This document shows positions 1 through 53,490 of a DNA stretch of 64,000 nt, piece after piece; the first letter of the stretch is position 1; each line of letters opens with the position of its first letter. Under the pieces are notes generated by a model, which was not told the DNA's origin, searched no databases, and worked only from the letters and a program-made list of their open reading frames with translations. The stretch is taken from sequence record LR756500.1, one strand, 5' to 3'. The position numbers were made by a program, and so were the translations under genes.

Positions 1-460
1 CCAAGTCTTTAGATGTACTAGCGTCAATTATTTTTCTTTCTAAATATAATCTTATTTGATTATCCATTAATACACTATCTAAAGCTACTAATAATTGTTG
101 CCTACTTCTTTCAGGCCCTATATCATCAAATCTTTGAAGCAATCTCATACTAGTTACTTTTTCTTTGAAAGGTCTTATTTGTTTTGTATAATATAACAAA
201 GTAACTTCTAATTTATTTTCATCTTTGTTTCCTTCTTTTTCTTTTGCTTTTCTTAAAACTTCATCAAATTCTTTTTGCGATGCAGTTCCTTTAACAGTAT
301 TAGGAGTTCTAAATGAGTTACTTGATTTTGATTTATTTTTATCATTAGAAGTGTTTTTAAACTTATTCGCATATTCGGGTGGAATATAACGTCCACTATA
401 TCTTATTTTTTCATCATCTGCTTCTAATAAAAATTCTTCGTATTCTAAAATGTATTTCAT
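1..460 (-). CDS. Hypothetical protein with N-terminal capsid-targeting-like tag (partial, runs off window start)
   Basis: Manual translation from ATG at 460: MKYILEYEEFLLEADDEKIRYSGRYIPPEYANKF..., open to the window edge; not in the ORF track. Confidence 0.75.
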   Translation of the reverse strand, partial: MKYILEYEEFLLEADDEKIRYSGRYIPPEYANKFKNTSNDKNKSKSSNSFRTPNTVKGTASQKEFDEVLRKAKEKEGNKDENKLEVTLLYYTKQIRPFKEKVTSMRLLQRFDDIGPERSRQQLLVALDSVLMDNQIRLYLERKIIDASTSKDL

Positions 461-515
461 ATGCTTACTCTATTTTAATTATATATTTTGAATATATAAT
501 TAAAAATAGAAGGTT

Positions 516-2633: not shown

Positions 2634-3013
2634 TTATTTAATTCATTTAAGTTAAAGTATCTAAACCCTCTAAATCCTTTCATAGGAATTGGCTCTATTT
2701 CATTAAATTGTCCTGATCTTTCTATAAATTTACCACTCCAATTTTTTCCTGTAGTAGAACATGTAAAAGATTTTTCCTTTATTCCTGTTATTTTCATCCA
2801 TCCCACAACATTACCATTATAATTTAGGTAACATTTATTTCCTACTATATCTTTTTTAGGAAGAAATGGAACTTTAAAATTTAAATTATTAGATCCATTT
2901 TTAACAGAATCTAATTCTTTTCTATATTCATTCCAATCTATATTAGAAGGTATAGTTATTATTATATCACTCTTATCAGTAACAACTTCTTCATATTCTT
3001 TTATATACTTCAT
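2630..3013 (-). CDS. Hypothetical protein with CTS-like tag (possibly ASCH/PUA-like beta fold)
   Basis: Starts MKYIKEYEE; motifs GNVVGWMKITG and PIPMKGFRGFRY; 4-nt overlap with the next gene; fold call tentative. Confidence 0.5.
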   Translation of the reverse strand: MKYIKEYEEVVTDKSDIIITIPSNIDWNEYRKELDSVKNGSNNLNFKVPFLPKKDIVGNKCYLNYNGNVVGWMKITGIKEKSFTCSTTGKNWSGKFIERSGQFNEIEPIPMKGFRGFRYFNLNELNK

Positions 3014-3027
3014 TACTTAAATTATTT

Positions 3028-3660
3028 TTAGATAAATTTTATGTTTAAATATCTCAGTTCTGCTGCTTTAGCAAAATCTCTATCTGTTGATTTATCACCT
3101 ATTATTCTTGAATTAGCTTTATCTATTTTTCCATATTTTTCTATAGTTTTAGTAATAGCTCCTATATTAGGTTTTCTCATAGGATCGGTTCTTTTAGTTG
3201 TTATACTATAGAAATAATCTAATAATGGAATTCCTTTTGCTGCTAATGATTTTTTAATTTTATTCATTTTATATTTAAAATCATCTTCATTAACATATCC
3301 TGATTCAATTCCTCCCTGATTAGTTACAATAATTATTTTATAATTTTTTTTAACCATTATTTTTAAATATGCAATACAATTACTTTTTAATATCCAATCA
3401 TTTTTATCCTCTGAAAATGTTCCTCCTGATGCAGGTTCAATTAATGTATGATCTAAATCTACAAAAATATATTTATTACCAAAAATTTCAGTTCTTATAT
3501 CATCTTTATTTTCAGTATCATATGTTATTTCCTTTTGAATATCTAGAGTTTTTTCCTCTGCATCTTTCTTTATAATTTTTTTCTTTTTCTTTCTTCTAAA
3601 AAGTCTTTGAAAAAAATTATCTTCATTCAAAAAATCATCATATGTTTGTATATATTTCAT
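3028..3660 (-). CDS. HAD-family (subfamily IIIA) phosphatase, polynucleotide 3'-phosphatase/GmhB-like, with CTS-like tag
   Basis: HAD motifs FVDLDHTL, IVTNQGGI, RKPNIG, IGDKSTDRDFA; N-terminus MKYIQTYDDFLNE. Confidence 0.85.
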   Translation of the reverse strand: MKYIQTYDDFLNEDNFFQRLFRRKKKKKIIKKDAEEKTLDIQKEITYDTENKDDIRTEIFGNKYIFVDLDHTLIEPASGGTFSEDKNDWILKSNCIAYLKIMVKKNYKIIIVTNQGGIESGYVNEDDFKYKMNKIKKSLAAKGIPLLDYFYSITTKRTDPMRKPNIGAITKTIEKYGKIDKANSRIIGDKSTDRDFAKAAELRYLNIKFI

Positions 3661-3671
3661 ATTTTTATAAT

Positions 3672-3995
3672 TTAAGTTAATCCACTATGAATTTTATCAT
3701 ATATAGGTTTTTGTAAAATTTTCCAATTAATATCTGGATTCTTTTCTTTGATTTTATTTAAAATTTTATCTATTCTTTTATTTAATTCATTAGAAGGTTC
3801 ATCATTTTTCCAATAATCATCATTTAAAGAAACATTATATATTTTATCTGCTTGCATTTCATCTTCTTTAGTAACTACTATATTTTCATAATCTGGTATT
3901 AACTCTTTAGCATATTTTATAAATTTATCATTTTGTTCATTTAGTTCTTCGGAACTACATGCTATATACTCTTCATACTCTTTTATATACTTCAT
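3672..3995 (-). CDS. Hypothetical protein with CTS-like tag
   Basis: Starts MKYIKEYEEY. Confidence 0.65.
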   Translation of the reverse strand: MKYIKEYEEYIACSSEELNEQNDKFIKYAKELIPDYENIVVTKEDEMQADKIYNVSLNDDYWKNDEPSNELNKRIDKILNKIKEKNPDINWKILQKPIYDKIHSGLT

Positions 3996-3998
3996 TAT

Positions 3999-5204
3999 CT
4001 ATAATTTTATTATATCAAATTCAAAATTCAATCCAGCATCTAAACAAGCTTTTCTTTTCAATTCATTAACTTCTTTATTCTTATTATACGTATATACACT
4101 CTTTACTTCAATTATCTTATTCTCACTAACTATATAAATATCTGGATAATAACGATGCTCTTTACCATCAATTGTAATATATATTACTTTCCCTATATAT
4201 CTTTCAATATCTTTATTCTCAATCATTATATCACTCTCATCATATCCCATCTCAAACAATTTATCCAATGCTTGTGGTTCATAGCCCTGCACTCTAGTTA
4301 TTTTACCAGAAGGCAATTCGTAACCTTTAAATCTAAATGCATTCATCATTGCTCTTTCAAATATAACTAAATCTTTCATTTGATGATCTACTCCATATCT
4401 TTCAATTAATGTTTCTTTAATTTTTTCACGAATAATTGATGATTTAAATATCTGATCTACACCATATCTTTCAATTAATGTATTTTTTATTTTTTCTTTT
4501 ATTTCATCAATATTTAATTTTAATGAACAATCTACATTATATCTTTTCATTAGTGTTTCTTTTATTTTTTTAGTTATACCTTCCTTTTTATGTCCATAAA
4601 TTTTATCTTTAGTTTCATTACATTTATTTATAACTTCTTTTACTTTCCAATTATGATCAACTCCATGCTTTTCTAAATAATTTTTTTTATATACTTCTCT
4701 AACAGTATTTGATTCAAATGGAGTTTTAAAACCATATTTTTTAATATTTGTATTTTCAATTTTTTTTCGAAATTCAGGATGTTGAATTGGTGCCTCAACT
4801 CCATATTTTTCTAACATAGTTTTTTTATACTTTTTTGCCCTTTTAATATAATGATTAGGATCATTCTTTTTTGTATTAACTATCTCATTGTACATATTAC
4901 TATTAATTTTACAAATTTTACTACAATACTTTTGATATCCTAAAGCTCTTCCTTTAAATCCTAATTCATTTTCTTTACATATAGGACAAATTGAAATATT
5001 TTGTACNNNNNNNNNNNNNNNNNNNNNNNNTTGAGAAAATTTAAAATCTTTATCTTTAAAATACTTATTATGATATTCTAATATTATTTTGAACTCTTTA
5101 TTAAGATTTATTTCAAACCAGCTTTCAGCAGTATTAGCAGCTTTAGTTGCTTTTGAATAATAATATGACATTTTTTCTTCATCTAAAATTATTATACTTT
5201 CCAT
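3999..5204 (-). CDS. Putative free-standing homing endonuclease (CxxC zinc motif, KYGV repeats, C-terminal PD-(D/E)XK-like domain)
   Basis: CPIC...CSKIC, repeated KYGV(E/D) units, YYPDIYIVSENKIIEVKS; paralogous to 43257-44270; spans the N gap at 5007-5030. Confidence 0.7.
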   Translation of the reverse strand: MESIIILDEEKMSYYYSKATKAANTAESWFEINLNKEFKIILEYHNKYFKDKDFKFSQXXXXXXXXVQNISICPICKENELGFKGRALGYQKYCSKICKINSNMYNEIVNTKKNDPNHYIKRAKKYKKTMLEKYGVEAPIQHPEFRKKIENTNIKKYGFKTPFESNTVREVYKKNYLEKHGVDHNWKVKEVINKCNETKDKIYGHKKEGITKKIKETLMKRYNVDCSLKLNIDEIKEKIKNTLIERYGVDQIFKSSIIREKIKETLIERYGVDHQMKDLVIFERAMMNAFRFKGYELPSGKITRVQGYEPQALDKLFEMGYDESDIMIENKDIERYIGKVIYITIDGKEHRYYPDIYIVSENKIIEVKSVYTYNKNKEVNELKRKACLDAGLNFEFDIIKL

Positions 5205-12925: not shown

Positions 12926-14605
12926 TTAATTGTATACATTTTCATTATTAATTGAACCATGATTTAATGTTCCATCTGGAAATATAACTATTTTGTTTAT
13001 AATTAAATCTTTATTTAAAGTATTATCGGGCAAAATATCTATATTTCCTAAATTTAAAGAAATAGGTCTATGTTGAAAAATATTCATAGGGTTAAAATTA
13101 TCATTGGTAGCTAAATGTTTACCTGAAAATATATTATCAGTATCTGCAGGTTTATAACTTTCAGTTCCATCTGGTAAAATAGATAATTTAAATGGCCTAT
13201 TTGTATTAATACTATTAGGAAAAATATTATCTTTATCTACAGCATTATAGCTTTTAGTTCCAACTGGTAATAAAGGTTCTGTATTAGATTTAATATAACT
13301 AGCAGTTCCATCTTTAAGTATAGGTTCTTCATTTAAATCAAATGTTCCGTGTGTTATATTTTGATATATTTTAACTTGGTTCATTTTAAATTTAGACACA
13401 TCTATACCATGAAGTCCTTTATAAATATTATCACTCATTCCAAATAAACCTTTAGCAAATTTAGTAACTCCACTTTCAATTGCACCACTTACTTTATCAA
13501 TAGCTCCATTAATAACAGCCATTCCTTTTCTTAAATATTTATTACTAGGCATATGAATGCCTGAATCCATTTGTATAAATCTTTTTCTTTTAGATTTATC
13601 TATAGTACCTTCTATTTTATCTTTAGGTGTACCATTTTTAAGCATAGGATGATCTGTAATAATACTAGAATACCAAAGTGGAGCAGAATCTATTTCAAGT
13701 ACTTGATATTCAAAAACTAATTGTTGTTTAGTAGGTTCTGGTCTAACATTAGTAATATTTTCCCAGAATGCAGTACTCTCCATAGTATTGAATTCGCATT
13801 TTTTCGCAATAATAACATATTGAGTTAAATTTTTCATTAATCTTCTAGCTGGATTATCACTATTATCACTACCTACATTATGACTTCTTGGTGCTAAATC
13901 TAAACCACTTAAAAGAGGAGTTGTATTATCAGCTTTCTTTTCTTTTATAAAATCTGTTTTACTATGAAATGGTCTAATATCTTGTATAAGAATTGTTACA
14001 TTAAATTTTACAAGATTAGCAGGTATTATTTCCCTAACGAATTTAGAATCATAAGTAGCTGCTCTATATAAATCAAGTAATCCTGTTATAGCAAAATCCA
14101 TAGATTCTAAACAATCAATAGATATTTTAGCATCATCACCTCCAGCAAAAGTAGAAAAATGATTATTATAAGTTTGCCATAATCTATCTAATCCAGTAAT
14201 TCCTTGCCAATACCAAGGTTGATTTTGATTAATATATTGTAATCTGTTATAAAATTCTTGTAAATATTCTAATCTTATAGTTTCATTTTGTCTATATAAA
14301 TATCCAGCTGCGCTATCTGCTGGATATGAAGGCTGTCCACTGCCTCCACTTCCACCCTGAAGACCTTTAAATAATGGGCTATCATACCAATCAAATAATA
14401 ATTTAAATCCAAGATATGTAGGTTCACTGTATCTGCTATAGTCATGTGCAGTTCCTTTTTTAAATGCATTAACATCTGCAGACCAAAAAGTAGTACCTTT
14501 ATTATCTATATCAGCATGATACATGATAGTTTTAGGATAATTACCTTTCAATAATCCTCCAACTGCGCCTTTTGCGGCATTCATTCCATCTTCTACTAAT
14601 CCCAT
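12926..14605 (-). CDS. Putative tail/baseplate structural protein (tube-like fold possible)
   Basis: Lies between hub and spike genes; EPTYLGFKLLFDW and WYWQGITGL motifs; fold is inference. Confidence 0.45.
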   Translation of the reverse strand: MGLVEDGMNAAKGAVGGLLKGNYPKTIMYHADIDNKGTTFWSADVNAFKKGTAHDYSRYSEPTYLGFKLLFDWYDSPLFKGLQGGSGGSGQPSYPADSAAGYLYRQNETIRLEYLQEFYNRLQYINQNQPWYWQGITGLDRLWQTYNNHFSTFAGGDDAKISIDCLESMDFAITGLLDLYRAATYDSKFVREIIPANLVKFNVTILIQDIRPFHSKTDFIKEKKADNTTPLLSGLDLAPRSHNVGSDNSDNPARRLMKNLTQYVIIAKKCEFNTMESTAFWENITNVRPEPTKQQLVFEYQVLEIDSAPLWYSSIITDHPMLKNGTPKDKIEGTIDKSKRKRFIQMDSGIHMPSNKYLRKGMAVINGAIDKVSGAIESGVTKFAKGLFGMSDNIYKGLHGIDVSKFKMNQVKIYQNITHGTFDLNEEPILKDGTASYIKSNTEPLLPVGTKSYNAVDKDNIFPNSINTNRPFKLSILPDGTESYKPADTDNIFSGKHLATNDNFNPMNIFQHRPISLNLGNIDILPDNTLNKDLIINKIVIFPDGTLNHGSINNENVYN

Positions 14606-14615
14606 TTTCTATATT

Positions 14616-15821
14616 TTATTTTGATGCGATGTAGTTTAATTTAAAATTAGAGGGACCACATACTCCTCTATGTAAAATATTCACTGCTGCATTATAATCT
14701 GCATCAATCTCTATTTTACAGCTTGAACATAAATAAACTTCACCTTTACGACTCTCTTTATCTATATTCGCGCATTTTGAACAAGTCTGGCTAGTATACG
14801 CTGGATTCACCTGCTTAATAAAGAAACCTTCTTCCTCGGCCAATAAATTTAATCTAGCATACACCTTTGGATAACTCCATCGCTGTATCTTATTCATTAT
14901 TTTGTTATTTATATATTTGTTTGAATTATATTTAACATTTTTTAATTCTTCAATAATCAATTGATCGGGACTTTCATTTCTTATAAACTCTTTAACAGTT
15001 ACATTAATTAACTCATCTCTTTCAATCAATGCTCTTTTAAATGATTTACTACCTTGCTCTTTTCTAGCTATCTTATAATAAATATTAAATAATTCTTTTC
15101 CATAATGTTCTCCTGAACTAGAAGATATTAATTTTTTATATCCTGTATCTATTCCTATAGACTTAATTATTTCTTTCTTTTTAGGTTCTTTCTTTTCCCA
15201 TATTAAATCTATAAAAAATTTATCATCTTTTTTTCTTAATATTATTGTATTCTTTCTGTTCCAATTTTCGTTTATAAACCTATTACTTTGTCTATAATGC
15301 TTAATAGGAATATTAATTTTAACTGATAAATGTTTATTATCTTGAAAATAAGGAGTTTTAATTCTAATAAATTCATCAAATATATTTCCTTTTTTAATAT
15401 CAAATAATCTATTATCAATATACAATGAAACATTTTTAATTTGAATTTTTGGAATTCTTTTGATATAATTTATGTTTAATTCACTAAATCTTTTAGATGT
15501 AAAGTTTTGATGAATATTATTTTTTATACATTTAGAATAAAGATATTTATATTTTTTATAAACTTTATTTTTAGATTTTTCTGTAGTACTTTTAATTATT
15601 TCAATTGCTTGTTTATATATAATATGTTTCCATTGAGAGTGTTTAAAAATATAATTTGGTAAAATTTTAGATGATATAAATTTTTCAAAAGGTAAAGTTT
15701 TGTTTAAAATTAGATCGATATAATATTGAAGCATTAGTTTATAATCATTATAGAATTGATCTATAATATTTAATTTTTCTTTATTTGAAAAACTTAAAAC
15801 ATGCTTACTCGTTCTTATCAT
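14616..15821 (-). mobile_element. tnpB: TnpB RNA-guided endonuclease (IS200/IS605-type), copy 1, no tnpA
   Basis: RuvC-I GIDTG, RuvC-II IIEEL, VNPAYTSQTCSKC...CSSC zinc finger, RuvC-III DADYNAAVNI all intact. Confidence 0.92.
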
Positions 15822-15871
15822 AATATATTTTCTTTAATAAATAAAAATTTTAATCAAATTGATGCGATGTA
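14621..15871. repeat. Exact 13-bp direct repeat TTGATGCGATGTA at 14621-14633 and 15859-15871 flanking tnpB copy 1
   Basis: Read directly; encodes YIAS in both the hub gene C-terminus (EYIASI) and the TnpB C-terminus (NYIASK). Confidence 0.9.
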
Positions 15872-17260
15872 CTCTCTTTTAAGAAGAGTTAATCTTTGTT
15901 TAATTGGTCCTGGAAAATTATAAAAATATGTTATATCCGCAATAACATAATCACCACTTAAAAAATCATTTTTTAAAGGTGTTTTATCTAATGAATTTAC
16001 TGTCTCTTCTTTCTGTATACTTTTAGCAGTTTCTTCATAATTAAAAATAAATATAGGAACACTCTGAAATTTAGTTAATGTCATATCTGCAGATTCTAAA
16101 ACTATATTCATTCCCATTTTAAATATTTCAGTTTTGTTTTGAAAGTTTAATACTTCAGAATATTTAAAATTTTCATGAACATTACCATCTGTTCTAGAAT
16201 CTTGTTTTCCTAAATATTTATATTTAACATGAGTATCAGAAACACCTTCAGGTACAAAATTATCCCCTTGTTTAATTAATCTTCCTTTTAAATGAACCAT
16301 ATTTTCAGAACCTTCAGTTGTTAATGGATCAACAAATTCACTTACATATTGATCTCCATCTACTTCAAAAAATTGCGCGTATCTTTTATATCCATTCATA
16401 AGAAATATTGTTCCACTATTATTAAACATTTGATAATCAGTAATATATTTAGAAGTCCCTTCGAATGTAACATGATTAGTTAACATTAAAGGAGCTTTTT
16501 GAATATCTTTTTTTAATTCATCAGGTGATACAGTATATCTAGCATCATTAACTCTATAAATTTCTGATTCAGTTATTTCAGAATCAATAGAAAATTGTTT
16601 ATTAATATTTATAAAACATAAATTATAATACGAGTCAATATATGATGTAAAAAAACTCGTATCATCTTTATATACATTTGATAAAGAATCCTTTAAAAAC
16701 TTTATTGTTGTATCTAATGGATTAATCCATTTCATTTTATCATTAGTATTTTCTTCATTAGTGGCAAATCCTAATTCTAATTTTTGAGAAATTTCTAAAA
16801 ATAAATCATAACTACTCATGTCATAAGATTCACAAAATTCAGTTAATAGATTTGGTACTTTCATTTGACCATAAATAGTAAATAATGTAGGTAACTTAGA
16901 AGATTTATCTCTAAATTGTGGACTAACGGATAAAATATCAAAATCTATTCTTATTTGTTTAAATACTTCTTCATTATTAGATCTTATTAAAAAGTTAATA
17001 ACATCACCATCTCTTGGAAAAAATCTGGACATAAAGTTCATACTTTTATCTTGAACATTAACTCTAATTGTTGGTAAAAATGATGTTAAATTTAATTCAA
17101 ATGAACCTAATTCTTTTATATCAAATTCATAACCATTTATTTTAATTAATGGGAGATGTATACCTCCAAAATCTGAAGCATCACTTTCAGGAATAGCCAT
17201 TTCATCAATAGTTATGGTTTTTTCAGTTATATTTAATATTGTATTTTCTAAATTTGCCAT
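15854..17260 (-). CDS. Baseplate hub protein, gp27/late-control-D-like
   Basis: LPTIRVNVQD near the N-terminus; C-terminal GDYVIADITYFY...QRLTLLKRE typical of hub proteins; synteny. Confidence 0.6.
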   Translation of the reverse strand: MANLENTILNITEKTITIDEMAIPESDASDFGGIHLPLIKINGYEFDIKELGSFELNLTSFLPTIRVNVQDKSMNFMSRFFPRDGDVINFLIRSNNEEVFKQIRIDFDILSVSPQFRDKSSKLPTLFTIYGQMKVPNLLTEFCESYDMSSYDLFLEISQKLELGFATNEENTNDKMKWINPLDTTIKFLKDSLSNVYKDDTSFFTSYIDSYYNLCFININKQFSIDSEITESEIYRVNDARYTVSPDELKKDIQKAPLMLTNHVTFEGTSKYITDYQMFNNSGTIFLMNGYKRYAQFFEVDGDQYVSEFVDPLTTEGSENMVHLKGRLIKQGDNFVPEGVSDTHVKYKYLGKQDSRTDGNVHENFKYSEVLNFQNKTEIFKMGMNIVLESADMTLTKFQSVPIFIFNYEETAKSIQKEETVNSLDKTPLKNDFLSGDYVIADITYFYNFPGPIKQRLTLLKREYIASI

Positions 17261-17869: not shown

Positions 17870-18485
17870 TCACCTTTAACTTTCTTATTAACTCATACTT
17901 TATATATAAACTAGAATCTTGACTTAACCAATTATCAACTATATAATCTATATTATTTATATTTAATATTTTTAAATTTAAATCTAATAATTCTATAGGT
18001 AATATTGATGATTCATTATTTTTAAAATTAATTGATATATCTAATATATTTAAATTTTTTAATTTTAGCAATATAGTTGGAAAAGTAATAAAATTATTTT
18101 TAGATAAATATAAACCTCCTAAATTTTTTAAATTACCTATTTCCTTCGGCAACTCAGTTAATTGATTATCATGCAAATATAAATCTTTTAATTTTTCTAA
18201 TTTTCCTATTTCTTTAGGTAACTCCTTTAAATTATTATTAAATGCAGTTAATATTTTTAAATTTTTTAAATTACCTATCTCTTTTGGTAATTGTGTTAAT
18301 TTATTGTTATATAAAAATAAACGTTCTAAATTTTTCAATTTACCTATTTCTTTAGGTAAGTCATTTATATTTTTATCATTTAATCCTAAATCTTTTATAT
18401 TTAAATCTTTTAATATTAAATTTAAAATTTTTTCACTTTGCTTTGATTCATTTAAAAAATCCTTATATTTTTTAATATATTTCAT
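17796..18485 (-). CDS. Leucine-rich-repeat protein with CTS-like tag
   Basis: Tandem 23-aa LRRs LxxLxLxxNxLxxLPKEIGxL; starts MKYIKKYKDFLNE; ends NADDFGFFGFKK. Confidence 0.9.
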   Translation of the reverse strand: MKYIKKYKDFLNESKQSEKILNLILKDLNIKDLGLNDKNINDLPKEIGKLKNLERLFLYNNKLTQLPKEIGNLKNLKILTAFNNNLKELPKEIGKLEKLKDLYLHDNQLTELPKEIGNLKNLGGLYLSKNNFITFPTILLKLKNLNILDISINFKNNESSILPIELLDLNLKILNINNIDYIVDNWLSQDSSLYIKYELIRKLKVSDWVRKKYDLLYNADDFGFFGFKK

Positions 18486-20317: not shown

Positions 20318-20332
20318 AAATTATATTACTTT

Positions 20333-20340
20333 TATTTATA
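20333..20340 (-). promoter_or_regulatory. T4-type late promoter TATAAATA
   Basis: Exact TATAAATA 15 nt upstream of the ATG at 20317. Confidence 0.5.
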
Positions 20341-20350
20341 TAGTTATTTT

Positions 20351-21529
20351 TTAATTAGAGGGACCATATACTCCTCTATGTAAAATATTCACTGCTGCAT
20401 TATAATCTGCATCAATCTCTATTTTACAACTTGAACATAAATAAACTTCACCTTTACGACTCTCTTTATCTATATTCCCGCATTCTGAACAAGTCTGGCT
20501 AGTATACGCTGGATTCACCTGCTTAATAAAGAAACCTTCTTCCTCGGCCAATAAATTTAATCTAGCATACACCTTTGGATAACTCCATCGCTGTATCTTG
20601 CTCATTATTTTGTTATTTATATATTTGTTTGATTTATGCTTAACATTTTTTAATTCCTCAATAATCAACTGATCAGGACTTTCATTTTTTATAAACTCTT
20701 TAACAGTTACATTAATTAATTCATCTCTTTCAATCAATGCTCTTTTAAATGATTTACTACCTTGCTCTTTTCTAGCTATCTTAGCATAAATTTCAAATAA
20801 ATTTCTTCCATAATACTCTCCTGAACTAGAAGATATTAATTTTTTATATCCTGCATCTATTCCTACCGATTTAATTATTTCTTTCTTTTTAGGTTCTTTC
20901 TTTTCCCATATTAAATCTATAAAAAATTTATTATCTTTTTTTCTTAATATTATTGTATTCTTTCTTTTCCAGTTTTCGTTTATAAACCTATTACTATACA
21001 TATGATATTTAATTGGAATATTAATTTTAACTGATCTATATTTATTATCTTGAAAATATGGAGTATATAATTTTATAAATTCATCAAATTTATATCCTTT
21101 TTCAATATTAAATAATCTATTATCAATATGCAATGAAATATTTTTAATCTGAATTTTTGGAATTCTTTTTATATAATTAATATTTAATTCATTAAATCTT
21201 TTAGATGTAAAATTTTGATGAATATTGTTTTTTATGCATTTAGAATAAAGATATTTATATTTTTTATAAACTTTATTTTTAGATTTTTCTGTAGTACTTT
21301 TAATTATTTCAATTGCCTGTTTATATACTATTTGTTTCCATACAGAATGATTAAAAATATAATTTGGAAGTTCTTTAGATGACAGAAATTTTTCAAAAGA
21401 TAAAGTTTTGTTTAAAATTAGATCGATATAATATTGAAGCATTAGTTTATAATCATTATAGAATTGATCTATAATATTTAATTTTTCTTTATTTGAAAAA
21501 CTTAAAACATGCTTACTTGTTCTTATCAT
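20351..21529 (-). mobile_element. tnpB: TnpB copy 2, close paralogue of 14616-15821, no tnpA
   Basis: First 43 aa identical to copy 1; GIDAG, IIEEL, CSEC/CSSC, DADYNAAVNI intact. Confidence 0.92.
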
Positions 21530-25144: not shown

Positions 25145-26299
25145 TTAAATTCCTCCTGCATCATTTATTGTCCAATTTTTAGTTCCTATTAAATATGTTC
25201 TTGATGCTTCAGCATCACCTCCTAATGTATATGTTTTTCCATTAGCTCCTAATGTAACATTTGATTGAACTAATTTAGTAGGAGATCCTCCACTCCATCC
25301 TGTCCATCCTATTAATAATGCATCATAATTTGTAGTATTTATTCCAGAACTTACAAACATATTTATCATAGTAGTAACTAAAGATATATCCCAATTTCCT
25401 ATATTTTGGTTGAATGCAACACAATTTTCAAACATATAATCCATATTAATAACAGATGATGTATCCCATGCTCCAATAGGTTGATTAAACGAAGTATTAT
25501 TTTTAAACATATAATCCATATTAATAACAGATGAAGTATCCCATATACTTATATTCTGATTAAAAGAAGTATTATAAAACATACTACGCATATCATTAAC
25601 ATTTAAAGTATTCCATATACTTATGTTCTGATTAAATAATGTAGCTCCATAAAACATATTTTGCATACTAATAACACTTGAAGTATCCCATAAACTTATA
25701 TCTTGATTAAAAGAAGAAGCATTATAAAATAATTGTGACATAGTAGTAACATTTGAAGTATCCCATAAACTTATATCTTGATTAAAAGAAGAAGCTTCTC
25801 TAAACATTGCACTTATATTTGTAATATTTGAAATATTCCATAAACTTATATCTCCATTAAAAGAAGAAGCTCCCAAAAACATATTTGCTAAAATAGTAAC
25901 ACTTTCTAAATTTGGATTATCTGTAAAATTACCTGTTAAATTACTACAACCATTAAAAGCAGATAAAAATGTTTTCCATTTAATGCTACCCCATTGTTCA
26001 ATAGTTAATATTTTTAATCTATCGCCAGTATTATTAAAATATATAGATTCACATATTCCAGTTATTTTAATAGTATATGTTCCTATACTAGAATATGTGT
26101 GAGTAGTTTCTGCTTGATTATAAGCAGTAATTTTATTTCTAATACCATCACCCCAATCAACAATACATGAATAAATATATCCAGATATAAATGGTAATTT
26201 AAATTGATTATTTGATGAAGAACCCGTACTTAAATTATCAGTTTTAACTGTTATAATAAAAGGACTTCCTTTTTTTATTAATTTATAATAATAACTCAT
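25145..26299 (-). CDS. BspA-family / DUF285 surface-repeat protein with N-terminal PKD-like domain
   Basis: VDWGDG (PKD), then about 25-aa repeats FNQ(D/N)ISxWDTSxVxxMxxMF. Confidence 0.85.
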   Translation of the reverse strand: MSYYYKLIKKGSPFIITVKTDNLSTGSSSNNQFKLPFISGYIYSCIVDWGDGIRNKITAYNQAETTHTYSSIGTYTIKITGICESIYFNNTGDRLKILTIEQWGSIKWKTFLSAFNGCSNLTGNFTDNPNLESVTILANMFLGASSFNGDISLWNISNITNISAMFREASSFNQDISLWDTSNVTTMSQLFYNASSFNQDISLWDTSSVISMQNMFYGATLFNQNISIWNTLNVNDMRSMFYNTSFNQNISIWDTSSVINMDYMFKNNTSFNQPIGAWDTSSVINMDYMFENCVAFNQNIGNWDISLVTTMINMFVSSGINTTNYDALLIGWTGWSGGSPTKLVQSNVTLGANGKTYTLGGDAEASRTYLIGTKNWTINDAGGI

Positions 26300-30210: not shown

Positions 30211-32133
30211 TTATCCAAAACTAAATGTTATTCCTGTAAGTATACCGGCAAATGAATCACCTACACTAACTCTTACTAAAATATATCCATTAGTATTAGC
30301 AGTACTTTTTGTACCTATAGTTAATCCCCATGCTGTACCAAAGGCTCTACCTACACCGCCTGCTGCATTTCTAGCTCCATCTCCATCAGCCCATTGTCCT
30401 GTTGCAAAATCTTGATATGCATCCATCCAACCTGTTTCAGCTGCTGCTAAACCAGGAGCTTTAATATGAACATGAATATTATTACCTGTTAATGCAGTAA
30501 GATCTGATACAAATGTTCCAGTTGATCCTGCTATGTTTAATACAAAGTTTCCAACTGTTGGAGCAACTTGTCTAAACCATCTATAGTAGTATCTAGTACC
30601 TGTACAGTTAGCTCCTGAATAATCTGGATTACCTCCAGGTCCATTTGTTATACCAGCAAAGTTTGCAGGATAAGCAGTATTACCAGGATAAACTAATTCA
30701 CTACCTATTACTTGTAAGCCATCATTATAACCAGCAGATCCTGCATCTGCTATTGTATTTGTAGATGTCCACATTCCAGTACCTAAAGATCCATAAGTAT
30801 TATATGAACTATTAGAAGGCATTCTATATGTTTCTGCATGATTAAAATCTTCAAATACTAATGATGAAGCTGTACCTACATCATCCATCAAAATATTAGC
30901 AATACTACTAGATGAGCTAGTTTGAGTTCCTTGTAATGTTCTAAGTACTCTAGTGTTAACTGTTATTGATTCATCCAATAATCTAATGCCACTTGTTATT
31001 GTTGCAGTCTTAAGACCTAATTGAGAAGCTGTATATTGAATACTGCTTGTATAATCTACTAAAGATGCATGAGATCCTATTGCTGGAATACTAACTGAAG
31101 GTATTGCACAGTTAGAAGCACCTGGATGACTAATTGCAGAACCAGAAGAACTATAAGTATTTAAATAAGCATTATTAATTGTTATTTGATATTTAGCAGT
31201 TCCTCCTGTATAGTATTGAACTCCTGAAAGATATTTAGATCCAGTCATTGCTAAAGTATCTAAAACTGGAGCAGTAAATGTAGTTATTGTTGTATCATGA
31301 TCTACTATAAATTGAAATCTAGCTAAAGTAGTATCAACTGCATTTAAAGTTCTAATTGCATGTACCCAGTTATATCCTCTTTGTATATTAGTATCATCAT
31401 ATTTTACTAACCAAGTTCCTGTTCTATGTTTAAATACATCTAAAGGAGTTAAATCTGGAAAATGAGCATCATCTGCTGCACTTAAAATAAAACCACTTAC
31501 AGTATTTCCTGATGTATTATCAATAGCAGCAGTTGTTGATGATAATGTTACAGTAGATACTAATGTTCCATTAACATATAGTCTAATAGTTCCTTCAGTT
31601 GCATTACCAAATGAGTTTGCTGGATAATTTACACCATCTGCAACTACATCATCGTTTAAAACACCTGTAATATCATTAGTTGCGGCTTCTGCTATAATAC
31701 CAAAGCCCATAGCAATACCATTTACTCCTATTCCGGGATTATAACCACCTTGAGATACATCGGCTAATGCATATCCTCCTATTGTATATCCAGTACCAAA
31801 ACTTAATTTACCAGCAGTTGCTGATAATGCACCAGTCCATTGATCTAATAAAGGAGCTGGTCCAGGAGCTAAAGCTTTTAATATTTCATTAAATCTATCA
31901 ATTGCTGTTCCTGTTGGAGTTAAAGGATTAAAGTCTGTAAATAATCCATCAACATAACCTGCAGTATCTTCTGCAGCTCCAATTACACCACCAGTTGTAG
32001 ATATTTGACTATCAACATAAATTTTTGTGGCTGCGTCCTGATCATCAATTGGATCATTAACATTTATTAAATTTTGACTATTTATATCAAAATTCTCGCT
32101 AACTTCTATTTGTTTATTTTGAATTCTTGGCAT
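30211..32133 (-). CDS. Putative fibre/structural protein
   Basis: N-terminus MPRIQNKQIEVSENFD shared with 26311-29196; QDAATKIYVD fibre motif; Thr/Gly-rich beta content. Confidence 0.65.
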   Translation of the reverse strand: MPRIQNKQIEVSENFDINSQNLINVNDPIDDQDAATKIYVDSQISTTGGVIGAAEDTAGYVDGLFTDFNPLTPTGTAIDRFNEILKALAPGPAPLLDQWTGALSATAGKLSFGTGYTIGGYALADVSQGGYNPGIGVNGIAMGFGIIAEAATNDITGVLNDDVVADGVNYPANSFGNATEGTIRLYVNGTLVSTVTLSSTTAAIDNTSGNTVSGFILSAADDAHFPDLTPLDVFKHRTGTWLVKYDDTNIQRGYNWVHAIRTLNAVDTTLARFQFIVDHDTTITTFTAPVLDTLAMTGSKYLSGVQYYTGGTAKYQITINNAYLNTYSSSGSAISHPGASNCAIPSVSIPAIGSHASLVDYTSSIQYTASQLGLKTATITSGIRLLDESITVNTRVLRTLQGTQTSSSSSIANILMDDVGTASSLVFEDFNHAETYRMPSNSSYNTYGSLGTGMWTSTNTIADAGSAGYNDGLQVIGSELVYPGNTAYPANFAGITNGPGGNPDYSGANCTGTRYYYRWFRQVAPTVGNFVLNIAGSTGTFVSDLTALTGNNIHVHIKAPGLAAAETGWMDAYQDFATGQWADGDGARNAAGGVGRAFGTAWGLTIGTKSTANTNGYILVRVSVGDSFAGILTGITFSFG

Positions 32134-32152
32134 AATTTATATTTTTATATTT

Positions 32153-33154
32153 TTATTTTATCGTTGAATATGTTAAACTTATAACATCAGTTAATCCTAA
32201 ATTAAATTGTGCTATAGAATAATTAAATATTAATTCACTTCCTGCAACTAAAGAAGCTCTTGATAAAACAGTAGCACCACTATCTGCACTAAAGTAAAAT
32301 ACTGATTCACTTATTGATGTATATGAAATAGAATAAGATATACCATTTATATAAACTTCAATATCACTATCTCCAGCTGGAGTAAATGCTAATGTTATTC
32401 CAGTAGGTTCATTATCAATTGATATAGTAAATGCTGTATTAATATTTTCATTCATTTGTCTATATAATGTAGATGCTTTTAATCCTGATGCAGATACACT
32501 TACAGAATCACCATCTGGTAAAATTGTAACTGAATCATTATCTATTGTCATTCCAAATCCTGGAATAACATCTAATATATTACCGTCTTTATCTAATCCA
32601 TCACCTGCAATAACTTGTCCTGCTCCAGAAAATTGAGCCCAATCTAAAGAAGTTGTTCCTAATACTATAGTACCATTAGTTGTTAAAACCCAACCACTAT
32701 CACTAAATAATGTTCCTTCTTGTATAAATGTAAAATCTCCTCCTTTTACTTCACCATTAGGATTACCATCAAAATCTAAAGGTCTAATAAATTCATCTAC
32801 ACCTGCATCATATAACCAAAGTCCATTTCCAGGTTTGTCTAGGACATCAGCATCTGTAAATAAAACTCTTTCTTGATCTAATAATGTAACTCCATCAAAA
32901 ATTGGATTTGGAGAAGTAGCAATACCTATCCATTTATCATTACCACTATCATATGAATAATCAAGTAACTCTATAAGACCATTAGTTTTAGCTCTACATG
33001 CATCTTTAACTATTAAACCTTCTCTATTATCATCAACATATTTTTTAGTAGCAACATCTTGAGGATTTTGAGGATCTACAACATTTATAATTTTATGCGT
33101 ATTCATGTCAAAATTACTTGTGACAATAATTTGTTTATTTTTTATTCTTGGCAT
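32153..33154 (-). CDS. Putative fibre/head-decoration protein
   Basis: MPRIKNKQI start; QDVATKKYVD; VKDACRAKT...RVLFTD...NGLW domain common in phage fibre proteins. Confidence 0.65.
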   Translation of the reverse strand: MPRIKNKQIIVTSNFDMNTHKIINVVDPQNPQDVATKKYVDDNREGLIVKDACRAKTNGLIELLDYSYDSGNDKWIGIATSPNPIFDGVTLLDQERVLFTDADVLDKPGNGLWLYDAGVDEFIRPLDFDGNPNGEVKGGDFTFIQEGTLFSDSGWVLTTNGTIVLGTTSLDWAQFSGAGQVIAGDGLDKDGNILDVIPGFGMTIDNDSVTILPDGDSVSVSASGLKASTLYRQMNENINTAFTISIDNEPTGITLAFTPAGDSDIEVYINGISYSISYTSISESVFYFSADSGATVLSRASLVAGSELIFNYSIAQFNLGLTDVISLTYSTIK

Positions 33155-33187
33155 AATTTATTTTTATTTTTCTTTTATTTTATTTAT

Positions 33188-47486: not shown

Positions 47487-47804
47487 TTATTTTGTGTTTT
47501 TTAATAGTTGTGATAATTTTATTATTTCATTTTTAGTTTTTATAATTAGTAATTTTTTATTTTCAATTAAAGTTAAAATATCATTCTGATTATTCCATTC
47601 TTTAATTGCTGCTATTTTACAAGCATTAATTTTTACTTTATTATCGCATTGTTTATTTTTACATTGTGCACTTGATATAAAACCATATTTATCTGCATAT
47701 TCATAAATATGAATATCATCATTTCCACATTTAATACATTTTGCTACATAATGTTCAACTATTTCTTCAGTCGATGGTATTAGTACATTTTGTTTGTATA
47801 TCAT
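47487..47804 (-). CDS. Small zinc-ribbon protein (Lar-like CxxC...CxxxxC, AIKEWN)
   Basis: CIKCGN...CKNKQC...AAIKEWN. Confidence 0.5.
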   Translation of the reverse strand: MIYKQNVLIPSTEEIVEHYVAKCIKCGNDDIHIYEYADKYGFISSAQCKNKQCDNKVKINACKIAAIKEWNNQNDILTLIENKKLLIIKTKNEIIKLSQLLKNTK

Positions 47805-47817
47805 AACTCATTTTTAT

Positions 47818-48714
47818 TTAATTTTCACTAATTTCTATAAATATTTCGTTAACTTGTGGAAAATCTTCTTTAATATGTAATTTGATGTGATCAACTGTAT
47901 CTTCTATTTTGTATCCTCTTGTAAAATCTCCCACACTTATAGATAATAATAATAAATATTGATTTTTTCCCATAGTCATCGTTTTAATTCTATTAATACG
48001 ATGAACCTCAACATTATCGTTAATTATTTCTTTAATTTTATTTCTATCTTCTCTTGGCATACTTTCACCTATTATTAGTTTTCTGAGTTCATTAGTTAGT
48101 GAAATAGCAACATAAGCTAAAATAAGTCCAATTATAATACTACCAATTGCATCAAATATAGGATTAAACAATGAAAGAATTGTACATATTAAAGCAACTA
48201 TTAAACCAGTCAATGCTGCAGCATCTTCTAATAATATAACAATTAAATTTATATCTATTGATTTTTTAATTTCTTTAAATAAATTTCCCTTTGAAGTTTT
48301 TCTAAATTGATTATATGCAACTAAAAAAGTTTTAGATTCAATAATAACTGAAATTCCTAATACTCCAATAGCCCACCAAAAAAATTCAATTGGTTGTGGA
48401 TTAGCTAATTTATGAAATCCTTCATATACTGAAAATGTTGCTCCTACGAAGAATAACAAAATAGCTACCATAAAGGCCCAAAAATATTCTTCTCGACCAT
48501 AACCAAAGGGATGTTGTTCATCACTAGGCTTTTTTGATCTTTTACTTCCTATAAGAAGAAATATTTGATTTAAACAATCTGCAGTTGAATGTATTGCTTC
48601 GGCCAACATTGATGCACTTTTTGTAAAAAATGCTGCTACAAATTTGCATATTGCTATTGTTGTATTTCCGACAAGTGCAGTAATTACTGCTTTTGTTGAA
48701 TTATCATGACTCAT
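47818..48714 (-). CDS. Cation diffusion facilitator (CDF) family transporter
   Basis: SASMLAEAIHSTAD, HPFGYGREEY, six TM helices, LLEDAAA, cytoplasmic C-terminal domain. Confidence 0.92.
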   Translation of the reverse strand: MSHDNSTKAVITALVGNTTIAICKFVAAFFTKSASMLAEAIHSTADCLNQIFLLIGSKRSKKPSDEQHPFGYGREEYFWAFMVAILLFFVGATFSVYEGFHKLANPQPIEFFWWAIGVLGISVIIESKTFLVAYNQFRKTSKGNLFKEIKKSIDINLIVILLEDAAALTGLIVALICTILSLFNPIFDAIGSIIIGLILAYVAISLTNELRKLIIGESMPREDRNKIKEIINDNVEVHRINRIKTMTMGKNQYLLLLSISVGDFTRGYKIEDTVDHIKLHIKEDFPQVNEIFIEISEN

Positions 48715-48724
48715 TTTTATTTAA

Positions 48725-50074
48725 TTAAGAATTAGCATCATATTCAGGATTAATATATTTAACAGAAATAGTATTTTCATATTTACTACGAATTACAATA
48801 CCTTCTATAATTTGATTCGTATTCTCTTTTATTTCTTTAAAATAATTATTACATTTTGCAATTAAAGTATCATAATCAAAAATACCTTCAAATAATTCTG
48901 ATGTATATTCAAAATTATATTTTTCACAAAAGTCTTTTAAATTATGAGATTGTCCGTAATGAATTCTAGTTGAATGTCCAGATGATAAATCATCTATACC
49001 AAAGAAAATAACTTTAGATTCCGATAATTTTGCATCAATATTTAATTTATTTCCAGATCCTTTATTTCCAGCACCTATTAATTCTCCTCTAAGTGCTAAT
49101 TGAACATTATTTTCTTTACAATATTCTAAAAGTTTATCTAAATATCCATATTTTTTTGTTGTATCTACCCATGAATCTCTAACTTCTGTTAATATAGATT
49201 CAAATTTAATTGAAGCTTCATCATTTGTAAAAAATTCATTTGTAATATCATTCATCCAACCTTTTGTAAATTTTTCTTTATCAAAGTGCTGTCTTAGTAT
49301 AACTCCATCTTCTGTTTTATATCCAGTAACTATTTCTTGATCAAGTTTCTTTTCTTGATTTCTAGTGCATATACCTACTAAATATTCTTCCGGATTTATT
49401 GGATTTTTTCTACAATATAAAGTAATAGAAGATCCATCTCGTTTAATGGTTCCACTAACTATAACAGATTTTTCAAAGGATTTGTTAATATGTTCTTTTA
49501 ACATTTCTAATCTTGATTCATCAGTTTTATACATAAAAGAAGGAAAATCTCCCTTCTGCAATCCGCTATTTTGTGAACCTTCTAATGAATCATCAGCAAC
49601 ATATTTTGTTATATTTAGTTCTGTTTGTAAATCAAAATTTTCAGGTAATTCATTAATTAAATTAACTGGTAATACAATATGAATTGGTAAAATTATACCA
49701 TTACTATATATCGGATCAGTATTATTTTCAAATCTAAAATTGAATTTTAATGCTCTTATACGACCCTTTTTACCTAGACGAGATTTTTTTAAATCTCCAC
49801 CTGGTCTCCAATATTCTTTAAATATATCGGTATCAGGAATACAATAATCAGGTTGAATATAAACAACTTTTTCACCTATTTCATAAAGTCCTTTTCCAAC
49901 AATAATATTAAATTCACAACTATTGCCGTCAGTATCTTTAACTCTAGCAACTTGTATCATATTTGCTTCAATTCCTTCTTTAAATATAGGAATTAATTTT
50001 TCAATAATAACAAAATCTACAGGTTTCATAACATTTAAAATAAAAAATAGTAAATAAGAATAGGTATAATACAA
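48725..50074 (-). CDS. ATP-dependent RNA ligase (DRB0094-like, N-terminal OB-like module); true start probably MKPVDF
   Basis: Motif I TIKRDGSS, LRGELIG, EGIVIR, VKYIN. Confidence 0.8.
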   Translation of the reverse strand: MYYTYSYLLFFILNVMKPVDFVIIEKLIPIFKEGIEANMIQVARVKDTDGNSCEFNIIVGKGLYEIGEKVVYIQPDYCIPDTDIFKEYWRPGGDLKKSRLGKKGRIRALKFNFRFENNTDPIYSNGIILPIHIVLPVNLINELPENFDLQTELNITKYVADDSLEGSQNSGLQKGDFPSFMYKTDESRLEMLKEHINKSFEKSVIVSGTIKRDGSSITLYCRKNPINPEEYLVGICTRNQEKKLDQEIVTGYKTEDGVILRQHFDKEKFTKGWMNDITNEFFTNDEASIKFESILTEVRDSWVDTTKKYGYLDKLLEYCKENNVQLALRGELIGAGNKGSGNKLNIDAKLSESKVIFFGIDDLSSGHSTRIHYGQSHNLKDFCEKYNFEYTSELFEGIFDYDTLIAKCNNYFKEIKENTNQIIEGIVIRSKYENTISVKYINPEYDANS

Positions 50075-53325: not shown

Positions 53326-53490
53326 ATGGAAGATTTTAAGTTATTAAAACTGTCGAAGGTGTGTAAAGAATTTAATGTAACTAGACAAACATTATATAAT
53401 TGGAAGGAGAAAGGCGTATTGAATTTTATAAAAATTGGCGGTTTGAATTTTATAAAAGATAAAGATATTAAAGCATTAATAAATAAGTAA
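53326..53490 (+). CDS. Stand-alone MerR/excisionase-type HTH (IS607 TnpA N-terminal-like) mini-gene
   Basis: Manual translation MEDFKLLKLSKVCKEFNVTRQTLYNWKEKGVLNFIKIGGLNFIKDKDIKALINK; the stop abuts the tnpB start. Confidence 0.75.
   Translation: MEDFKLLKLSKVCKEFNVTRQTLYNWKEKGVLNFIKIGGLNFIKDKDIKALINK

What the first reader, a model, noticed from the sequence alone, without database searches (positions are those of the whole stretch)
14616..15871. Transposase-free TnpB whose probable guide matches its own insertion site: candidate RNA-guided homing element
Seen: on the coding strand TACATCGCATCAA (13 bp, GC-rich for this genome) occurs at the 3' end of the upstream hub gene and again just after the sequence shared by tnpB copies 1 and 2 (...GGTCCCTCTAATT...AAC). 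Collapsing the repeat restores a clean allele, hub ...EYIASK-stop then AATATAGAAAATG of the next gene. Copies 1 and 2 share no real left-end sequence upstream of the ATG and no tnpA is in the window. Established: the TnpB omega-RNA overlaps the gene 3' end and uses right-flank sequence as guide; IS200/605 insertion does not duplicate the target. Inference: the guide TACATCGCATCAAAATAAAA fully matches only the empty allele, while the occupied allele keeps 13 nt. TnpB would then cut tnpB-less co-infecting phage at an essential baseplate gene and spread by homologous repair, like a homing endonuclease.
Basis: partly seen in the sequence, partly recalled or inferred. Interest (0 to 1): 0.85.

Follow-up and report, generated by a model that had tools for sequence, protein, structure and literature searches.

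The report
Transposase-less phage TnpB with target repeat
A 460-kb groundwater phage carries an RNA-guided nuclease gene (tnpB, IS607 type) that has lost its transposase, sits between two tail-baseplate genes and is flanked by a real 13-bp duplication of its insertion site; this fits spread by RNA-guided homing, which is already known for TnpB, but does not prove it.

Summary
TACATCGCATCAA occurs exactly twice in the window, at both junctions of a 1,238-bp tnpB insertion. Collapsing the repeat restores the upstream gene's ancestral 3' end, as seen in tnpB-free relatives.

The interpretation needs correcting.
- The element is IS607-derived, not IS200/605. Its 60%-identical relatives carry a serine-recombinase tnpA. 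The phage itself has no Y1 or resolvase domain.
- Across the family, a covarying hairpin and a 5-bp pseudoknot mark where the guide-RNA scaffold ends. In copy 1 this is window position 14631.
The repeat is a 3-nt core (TAC) plus 10 nt of guide-proximal target.
- Copy 1 differs from copy 2 by a compensatory A-U to G-C change in this pseudoknot, at the cost of a conserved Tyr. With dN/dS 0.35 and a slowly evolving 3' block, both protein and RNA look selected.

Homing into tnpB-less co-infecting phages is the best reading but remains untested. No empty allele exists in the collections, which hold no close relative. The concept is already published for IS605/IS607 elements and plasmids.

The repeat is not explained by IS607 chemistry. 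A second, independent case (L062) suggests a repair or recombination scar.

The parts
15854..17260 (-). Upstream tail/baseplate-module gene (468 aa). Its last codon and stop were changed by the insertion (...YIASI-TGA instead of the ancestral ...YIASK-TAA).
   Evidence: ORF. C-termini of 77 homologues. tnpB-free gene order in relatives. No family or PDB match.
15859..15871 (-). Left copy (R1) of the 13-bp direct repeat. It consists of TAC (core, TAM-like end of the left flank) plus ATCGCATCAA (a copy of the first 10 nt of the inferred guide target).
   Evidence: The left junction is bridged by a Logan contig from a second sample.
15822..15858 (-). 37-nt leader between R1 and the tnpB ATG. It has no canonical IS607-type left end and no room for tnpA or a group I intron. 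Only the last ~10 nt are shared with copy 2.
   Evidence: The canonical LE motif is found in relatives but not next to copies 1 and 2. The alignment is uninformative.
14616..15821 (-). tnpB copy 1 (401 aa). RuvC D225/E291/D375 and the zinc-ribbon cysteines are present. The ORF reads through the right end into the ancestral last codons and stop of the upstream gene. It carries the unique substitution Y388C (codon at 14660-14658).
   Evidence: dN/dS against copy 2 is 0.35.
14631..14930 (-). Inferred guide-RNA (omega RNA) scaffold, comprising the slowly evolving last ~285 nt of the ORF plus the right end. It includes the covarying hairpin at 14670-14648. The loop GTGGT (14659-14655) pairs with the terminal ACTAC (14635-14631) as a pseudoknot.
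   Evidence: 8 differences in 285 nt against 71 in 891 nt between copies. Hairpin covariation. Pseudoknot: 130 of 130 cells paired, with both-sided changes in 4 of 5 pairs. The copy-3 remnant keeps just this part.
14611..14630 (-). Inferred guide/target segment of copy 1 (ATCGCATCAAAATAAAATAT). It covers the ancestral last four codons and stop of the upstream gene plus intergenic bases. Its length is assumed from other TnpBs.
   Evidence: The flanks of family members diverge immediately after the terminal 5-mer. The sequence is unique in the phage genome. The 16-22 nt cleavage distance and 10-nt native guide of an IS607 TnpB come from PMC11061315.
14621..14633 (-). Right copy (R2) of the 13-bp repeat. 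Its first 3 nt are the last 3 nt of the element's right end, and its last 10 nt are the start of the guide.
   Evidence: The right junction is bridged by a 10.4-kb Logan contig.
12926..14605 (-). Downstream gene (559 aa) of the baseplate module. In relatives it directly follows the upstream gene.
20340..21529 (-). tnpB copy 2 (392 aa, ORF 20351-21529) with its right end finishing at 20340 (...ATAACTAT). Its inferred guide is ATAAATAAAAGTAATA..., the leader of the next baseplate gene. It has no flanking repeat beyond chance.
   Evidence: Relatives lack tnpB at this position.

Best explanation
The insert is a transposase-less derivative of an IS607-family element: a tnpB gene whose last ~285 nt plus about 20 nt of right end encode its own guide RNA.

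The RNA scaffold ends at window position 14631. The guide is transcribed from the adjacent flank (ATCGCATCAAAATAAA...). That flank is the ancestral 3' end of the upstream baseplate-module gene.

The 13-bp repeat has two parts:
- A 3-nt core (TAC). In IS607-type elements the core is shared by the end of the left flank and the end of the element.
- A 10-nt copy of the guide-proximal target.

Both the protein and the RNA are under selection. The phage encodes no transposase. The most likely way the unit persists and spreads is therefore RNA-guided cutting of unoccupied alleles in co-infecting related phages, followed by recombinational repair from the occupied genome (homing).

The carrier genome would be spared for two reasons:
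- At R2 the full match is preceded by element sequence instead of the flank motif.
- At R1 the flank motif is followed by only 10 matching nt.

The duplication is not a product of known IS607 or IS605 transposition. It is most simply a scar of recombination or break repair between an occupied and an empty allele, an event that also removed the left end and tnpA.

Shown: the anatomy, the ancestry of the site, family membership of the nuclease, the RNA covariation, purifying selection and the absence of a transposase.

Inferred: guide length, TAM, cleavage, homing and the origin of the repeat.
For: - Repeat and ancestral allele.
- Independent assemblies and contigs.
- IS607 lineage: the closest homologues (59-62% identity) have an overlapping Resolvase-domain tnpA directly upstream.
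- Element ends: the core TAT occurs at both ends of canonical relatives, with an A-rich left flank.
- No Y1 or resolvase domain in the 96%-complete near-identical record; only HTH remnants.
- Hairpin with compensatory changes in 5 of 7 pairs.
- Loop-to-terminus pseudoknot: 130 of 130 cells paired, 0 of 2000 shuffles reach this, and shifted registers fail.
- Copy 1 against copy 2: an A-U to G-C double change in the pseudoknot that forces Y388C. Tyr is kept in at least 90% of 30 aligned homologues.
- dN/dS of 0.35, and a 3' block with 2.8% divergence against 8.0% elsewhere.
- Catalytic and zinc residues are intact.
- Published mechanism: IS607 TnpA excises scarlessly through a circle with a core dinucleotide at both junctions. 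Mismatched cores give non-matching junction dinucleotides. IS607 TnpB cuts the empty donor joint and drives homing (PMC10690162).
- TnpA-independent spread has been shown in plasmids (PMC11870625, as summarised in PMC13565253).
Against: - No empty allele was found. The junction-specific 20- and 28-mers are absent from viral and metagenome collections, and the Logan contigs show no skipping joint. This is weak evidence, because those collections hold only this phage and contigs drop rare variants.
- There are no RNA data. No known guide-RNA family matches, RAGATH-18 included.
- The site GAG|TAC fits poorly with the family's usual left flank AAA|TAT, so efficient cutting of the empty allele is uncertain.
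- The TAM-like core at the target and the end of the element differ by only one base within the last five (AGTAC against ACTAC). Self/non-self discrimination therefore rests on an untested position.
- Y388C could impair the protein.
- The repeat is not predicted by the homing model.
Confidence: 0.5

Rival explanations
1. Stranded remnant. The unit is a dead-end fragment of an IS607 insertion, left after deletion of its left end and tnpA. It has no current role, and the repeat is a by-product of one illegitimate recombination.
For: - No transposase in the genome.
- A third copy is clearly decaying.
- Related phages are full of internally deleted and frameshifted copies.
- The L062 tnpB is broken.
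- No empty allele is known.
Against: - dN/dS of 0.35 between copies 1 and 2, with catalytic residues intact.
- Synonymous-site conservation of the 3' RNA block.
- A compensatory double change that keeps the pseudoknot in copy 1.
- Two intact copies at different sites share an ATG-to-right-end unit.
Confidence: 0.2
2. Domesticated weapon or regulator rather than a selfish homing element.

One version: the RNP cuts competing related phages at the baseplate-gene end without being copied (exclusion).

The other version: it binds the TAM-plus-10-nt half-site R1, without cutting, to regulate read-through into tnpB or the neighbouring genes, as short-guide TldR proteins do.
For: - R1 keeps the flank motif plus exactly the guide-proximal 10 nt.
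- A second element (L062) has the same arrangement with 11 nt.
- An IS607 TnpB carried a native guide of only 10 nt (PMC11061315).
- Phage TldRs use short guides (recalled from PMC10705468; not checked here).
- Homing endonucleases can also kill diverged competitors (PMC13565253).
Against: - The RuvC residues are intact, unlike TldR.
- There are no expression data.
- The guide has no other near-cognate site in the phage genome above control level.
- Exclusion and homing are not mutually exclusive.
Confidence: 0.15
3. True target-site duplication. The ATG-to-right-end unit is moved by an unidentified enzyme, from the host or another phage, that makes cuts staggered by 13-14 bp.
For: - There are two independent elements with 13- and 14-bp flanking repeats. 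Repeats of 13 nt or more were almost absent from the control offsets, where only one locus exceeded 12.
- Both repeats end in CAA and are followed by AATA.
Against: - The first 3 nt of the right copy belong to the conserved, base-paired end of the element in all family members, including those without repeats.
- About 45 other loci, including copy 2, show no such repeat.
- No candidate enzyme lies in the insert.
- IS607 and IS605 make no duplications (PMC13565253).
Confidence: 0.1
4. Assembly artefact or chance repeat.
For: Two 93%-identical tnpB copies fragment the Logan assemblies.
Against: - Two independent long assemblies agree.
- Contigs bridge both junctions.
- The chance of this 13-mer recurring at the junction is about 1e-6.
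- The right copy continues into the homologous gene end seen in relatives.
Confidence: 0.02

Closest known systems
IS607-family tnpA(serine recombinase)-tnpB elements, such as the Clostridium botulinum IStron and ISFba1 (PMC10690162, PMC11061315)
   Same: - The nearest TnpB homologues sit in such elements.
- The guide RNA overlaps the 3' end of the gene and takes its guide from the right flank.
- A short core is shared by the left-flank end and the element end.
- The best PDB sequence hit is a chain named 'Transposase' (8hr5), matched over the RuvC/zinc-ribbon part only.
   Different: - No tnpA and no canonical left end.
- The core is TAT/TAC instead of GG.
- The left flank is A-rich instead of the TGGG/AGGAG-type TAM.
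- No RAGATH-18 match.
- There is a 13-bp flanking duplication, which the family does not make.
TnpB-driven homing of IS200/IS605 elements and the plasmid 'gene drive' (bioRxiv 10.1101/2023.03.14.532601; PMC11870625)
   Same: The proposed logic is the same. The guide matches the joint that exists only when the element is absent, a cut is made, and repair copies the element from the occupied allele. The plasmid case works without TnpA.
   Different: - The transposase lineage is different.
- The setting is a lytic-type huge phage and its co-infecting relatives.
- Nothing has been tested here.
- The extra half-target is kept on the left.
Free-standing homing endonuclease genes of T4-like phages (Seg and Mob; intronless homing)
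   Same: A nuclease gene wedged between conserved phage genes, with no transposase. Its expected spread is through co-infection and recombination. The same window also carries a protein-guided homing-endonuclease-like gene (3999-5204).
   Different: Recognition here would be by RNA guide plus a short motif, and self-protection would come from splitting the target rather than from sequence polymorphism.
TldR, nuclease-dead TnpB-derived RNA-guided repressors of phages
   Same: Phage-borne, transposase-less TnpB relatives with short effective guides. The 10-nt half-site upstream of tnpB invites the comparison.
   Different: The catalytic RuvC residues are intact here, and no regulated target has been identified.

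Membership tests
TnpB (RuvC nuclease of the IS200/IS605-IS607 superfamily) | Cas12f1-like TNB/zinc-ribbon domain and a split RuvC with D-E-D | tested here: met
   PF07282 at E 4.5e-17. D225, E291, D375, C347, C350 and C368 are invariant in a 30-sequence alignment that includes copy 1. The PDB hits are TnpB, Cas12f and CasPhi.
TnpB (RuvC nuclease of the IS200/IS605-IS607 superfamily) | Guide RNA encoded over the 3' end of the gene, with the guide taken from the flank | tested here: inconclusive
   Strong indirect support comes from the covarying hairpin and pseudoknot, the conserved 3' block, and flanks that diverge right after the terminal 5-mer. There are no RNA data and no Rfam match.
IS607 family element | Serine-recombinase TnpA encoded next to tnpB | tested here: not met
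   Absent at copies 1 and 2, and absent as a catalytic domain from the whole near-identical record. Present in the closest relatives. The unit is therefore a derivative, not an autonomous member.
IS607 family element | No target-site duplication; the same short core at the left-flank end and the element end | tested here: not met
   The core identity is met (TAC at both). However, an extra 10 nt are duplicated, which the family does not produce (PMC13565253).
IS607 family element | Terminates in GG and inserts after GG; G-rich TAM | tested here: not met
   This clade ends in TAT (TAC in copy 1) and sits after A-rich flanks.
IS200/IS605 family element | Y1 (HUH) TnpA | tested here: not met
   No PF01797 match in the phage record, while the control genomes do match. 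None was seen next to any relative examined.
IStron (IS607/IS605 fused to a group I intron) | Group I intron at the 5' side that splices the element out of the host transcript | tested here: not met
   Only 37 nt separate the left repeat from the ATG. No intron family matches at E up to 10.
Homing endonuclease (functional class) | Cuts the allele lacking its own gene and is copied into it; empty and occupied alleles coexist | not testable with these tools
   Searches for the empty junction found nothing. The collections contain only this phage, and the next relative is at 54% protein identity.
TldR-type RNA-guided repressor | Inactivated RuvC site | tested here: not met
   The catalytic residues are conserved.

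The most novel reading that the evidence does not exclude
The flanking repeat consists of the element core plus the first 10-11 nt of the guide-matched target. It is seen independently in this phage and in L062. On this reading it is the footprint of TnpB-triggered break repair: an empty allele was cut, its TAM-proximal stub was kept, and copying from an occupied allele stopped before the left end and tnpA.

This would turn a full IS607 into a transposase-free 'homing cassette'. It would also leave a TAM-plus-10-nt half-target that the RNP can bind but not cut, usable for self-immunity or autoregulation.
Probability: 0.15. Interest if true: 0.8.

Novelty: new variant of a known kind. Interest (0 to 1): 0.55.

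Why it matters
TnpB homing has been shown in bacteria and plasmids and has only been theorised for phages. This locus offers a concrete, testable phage case. It has an intact nuclease, a defined guide/scaffold boundary, a reconstructed empty target inside a structural-gene module, and no transposase to confound the assay.

The family-wide pseudoknot rule fixes where guides start in hundreds of phage-borne relatives. Many of those are reduced to guide-RNA-only remnants.

The unexplained 13-14-bp duplication could also be informative. If it proves to be a repair scar, it would be sequence-level evidence of past RNA-guided cutting, and a route by which insertion sequences become free-standing homing cassettes.

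Tried and rejected
- **Empty allele.** Junction-specific patterns were absent from viral contigs and metagenome contigs. A pattern common to both alleles found only this phage's own contig. No skipping joint appeared in Logan contigs of four runs. This is uninformative, because no close relative is on record.
- **Known RNA families.** No Rfam hit around either copy or in eight related loci, RAGATH-18 included.
- **Flanking repeats as a general family feature.** They appear only in copy 1 and L062. The 17-nt match in L018 is element-derived sequence. The 11-nt match in L056 lies about 600 nt away. The 6-8-nt match at copy 2 is at control level.
- **T4-type late promoter (TATAAATA).** I considered this as an explanation for the recurrent TATATAAATAA motifs. 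It is not enriched: 31 hits against 40 expected.
- **Homology of the 37-nt leader to the canonical left end or to the tnpA 3' end.** Similarities seen by eye were not borne out by alignment.
- **Identity of the upstream gene as a hub.** No Pfam or functional PHROG hit, and no PDB hit with a 33-sequence profile.
- **Other targets of the guides in the phage genome.** Near-matches are at control level.
- **IStron reading.** Rejected.
- **Reverse-transcription models for the duplication.** Considered and dropped. No suitable 3'-OH/RNA pairing exists, and no reverse transcriptase is present.

Full report
**Source and setting**

The window is part of LR756500.1, an uncultured 462-kb phage. It comes from groundwater metagenomes. 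A near-identical 429-kb IMG record (G001) is also held.

Genes in the region run on the minus strand. They form a tail/baseplate module:
- 17264-17869 hits baseplate-wedge and sheath PHROGs.
- 12141-12923 hits gp5-like hub/lysozyme PHROGs.

The 468-aa gene upstream of the insert has 77 homologues but no named family. Calling it a 'hub' is therefore unverified.

**The observation**

TACATCGCATCAA occurs at 15871-15859 and 14633-14621 on the minus strand. It occurs nowhere else in the window, even with two mismatches. The two copies bracket 1,238 bp that hold only tnpB (14616-15821).

The upstream gene now ends ...REYIASI-TGA. Removing one repeat copy and the insert gives ...REYIASK-TAA, then 10 nt, then the ATG at 14605.

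Three independent facts show that this collapsed allele is ancestral:
- The closest homologues end in K after a similar tail.
- In tnpB-free relatives L096/L097 and L098 the homologous gene is followed directly by the next gene.
- Their DNA ends GCACCAAAATAA, against GCATCAAAATAA at R2 plus 6 nt in the window.

Both junctions are present in a second assembly and in Logan contigs from two samples.

**What the element is**

Copy 1 (401 aa) and copy 2 (20351-21529, 392 aa) are 90% identical. A third, decaying copy outside the window keeps only the last ~285 nt.

More than 500 homologues exist. Those at 59-62% identity typically have a Resolvase-domain gene overlapping the tnpB start by 8 nt. That is the IS607 arrangement.

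Other relatives are solo, or carry a small Arc-like ORF, or are internally deleted. At least 310 viral contigs carry the family, several with two or three copies.

The phage record has no Y1 and no resolvase catalytic domain. It holds only HTH-only remnants of IS607-type TnpA, one of them in the window at 53326-53490.

**Right end and guide boundary**

Across the family, the codons for R-G-x-Y-S-P-S form a hairpin whose stem covaries (for example AGAGGAG/CCCTCT against TTGGGAA/TCCCAA). RNAalifold finds it, with both-sided changes in 5 of 7 pairs.

After a variable linker, the element ends in a conserved ...AGTAACTAT. The flanks of independent insertions diverge immediately afterwards.

The last five nucleotides are complementary to five loop nucleotides of the hairpin, and the two sets covary:

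| Loop | Terminal 5-mer | Where |
|---|---|---|
| ATAGT | ACTAT | commonest combination |
| ACAGT | ACTGT | |
| ATAAT | ATTAT | |
| ATTGT | ACAAT | |
| ATGGT | ATTAT or ACTAT | |
| GTGGT | ACTAC | copy 1 only |

In 26 aligned sequences, 130 of 130 cells pair. No shuffle in 2000 reaches this, and shifted registers fall to about 25-58%. A pseudoknot next to the guide is in line with what I recall of solved TnpB guide RNAs. I did not check that here.

This places the end of the copy-1 scaffold at 14631 and the first guide base at 14630.

**Evidence of selection**

Copies 1 and 2 differ in this pseudoknot by a double change, A-U to G-C. The loop change turns the otherwise conserved Tyr388 codon TAT into TGT.

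The last 285 nt of the gene differ at 8 positions (2.8%), against 71 of 891 (8.0%) upstream. Almost none of the 3' changes are synonymous. dN/dS between the copies is 0.35. The catalytic and zinc-binding residues are intact.

Both protein and RNA therefore look functional.

**Re-reading the repeat**

In canonical relatives the left end begins TATAATAT... after an A-rich flank, and the right end finishes ...TAT. This matches the IS607 rule that the same short core stands at both junctions. It also matches the published finding that a mismatched core yields non-matching junction dinucleotides (PMC10690162).

In copy 1 the core is TAC on both sides. This accounts for the first 3 nt of the repeat, and for the T-to-C change that the loop then compensated.

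The remaining 10 nt (ATCGCATCAA) are a left-side copy of the start of the guide target. Neither IS607 nor IS605 chemistry produces this (PMC13565253). Copy 1 also lacks the canonical left end.

A scan of about 50 distinct family loci found one more case. In L062, TATATAAATAACAA lies at 2443-2456, across the stop codon of the upstream gene. It lies again at 3692-3705, as the last 3 nt of the right end plus 11 nt of flank. L062 also has no canonical left end, and its tnpB is frameshifted.

Only one locus exceeded 12 nt at any control offset.

I cannot decide how the duplication arises. There are three candidates:
- A scar of break repair or illegitimate recombination between an empty and an occupied allele.
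- Re-entry of an aberrantly excised circle through the 13-bp homology.
- An unknown staggered-cut insertion.

**How it most likely works**

The guide is ATCGCATCAAAATAAA... A full target preceded by flank sequence (GAG-TAC) exists only in the collapsed allele. At R2 the match is preceded by element sequence (AAC-TAC). At R1 only 10 nt match.

This is the standard TnpB logic. It has been shown experimentally for IS605 and IS607 elements (10.1101/2023.03.14.532601; PMC10690162), and without TnpA in plasmids (PMC11870625, as discussed in PMC13565253). Homing into tnpB-less co-infecting relatives is therefore the best-supported mechanism.

It is inference, for these reasons:
- No empty allele is on record, and the collections hold no close relative.
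- There are no RNA data.
- The TAM is unknown. The site fits poorly with the family's usual AAA|TAT flank.

An IS607 TnpB cuts 16 and 22 nt from the TAM and carried only 10 nt of native guide (PMC11061315). The 10-11-nt length of the duplicated part may or may not be related to that.

**Verdict**

The element is a new variant of a known kind: an IS607-derived, transposase-free tnpB/guide-RNA cassette in a huge phage. It has an unexplained target duplication and clear signs of selection on its guide RNA.

The homing idea is plausible and directly testable, but it is not conceptually new.

Noticed in passing
window 53326-54813 (+): A 54-aa HTH-only remnant of an IS607-type TnpA is followed at once by a 440-aa protein with no Pfam or PHROG hit. 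That protein aligns to the TnpB RuvC region (hhalign probability 84%, E 7e-6) but lacks the zinc-ribbon insertion. It is possibly a divergent TnpB-like nuclease.
   Followed up: partly
L003 1500-1788 (G001 233522-233802, outside the window): The third tnpB copy is reduced to the last ~285 nt plus the right end. That is the inferred guide-RNA gene with a guide of its own (AATAAATACAAA...). The frame is broken and there is a 12-nt deletion.
   Followed up: partly
L108, L110, L111, L113-L117: Related phages carry many internal-deletion derivatives of tnpB. These keep the 5' start and the 3' RNA end.
   Followed up: partly
window 14658-14660 (-): Tyr388 is replaced by Cys in copy 1 only. The substitution coincides with the RNA-level compensatory change. 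Part of the apparent protein conservation at this codon may really be an RNA constraint.
   Followed up: yes
window 3999-5204 (-): A 401-aa DUF7487/TnsA-like protein hits PHROG 'homing endonuclease' families. A homologue lies directly beside a solo tnpB in L008 and L100.
   Followed up: no
L099 1326-1508; L105 1337-1501: In two close relatives a 54-60-aa ORF replaces tnpA directly upstream of tnpB. It looks Arc/ribbon-helix-helix-like by eye only; I ran no domain search. L099 shares its right flank with the full IS607 copy in L107.
   Followed up: no
L062 2441-2460 plus 3706-3711; window about 14903-14922 (-): There is a 20-nt identity (AATATATAAATAACAAAATA) between the reconstructed empty site of L062 and codons ~298-305 of the window's tnpB copies, at the start of the conserved RNA block. 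It is unexplained. A late-promoter explanation was not supported.
   Followed up: partly
window 18022-18435 and 25355-25866: There are tandem repeats inside ORFs. One is five 69-nt units in the 229-aa ORF next to the wedge-like gene. The other is six ~75-nt units in a DUF285 protein.
   Followed up: no
window 420-481 / 2593-2654; 2988-3050 / 3970-4032; 32108-32159 / 33129-33180; 47788-47823 / 48691-48726: Pairs of 36-63-nt blocks, 76-87% identical, sit at the starts of different minus-strand genes. They may be shared leader or promoter modules.
   Followed up: no
window 20320-20339 (-): The inferred guide of copy 2 targets the leader just upstream of the 607-aa baseplate gene. Both intact copies therefore sit in the same structural module, 5.7 kb apart. 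Relatives have neither insertion.
   Followed up: partly
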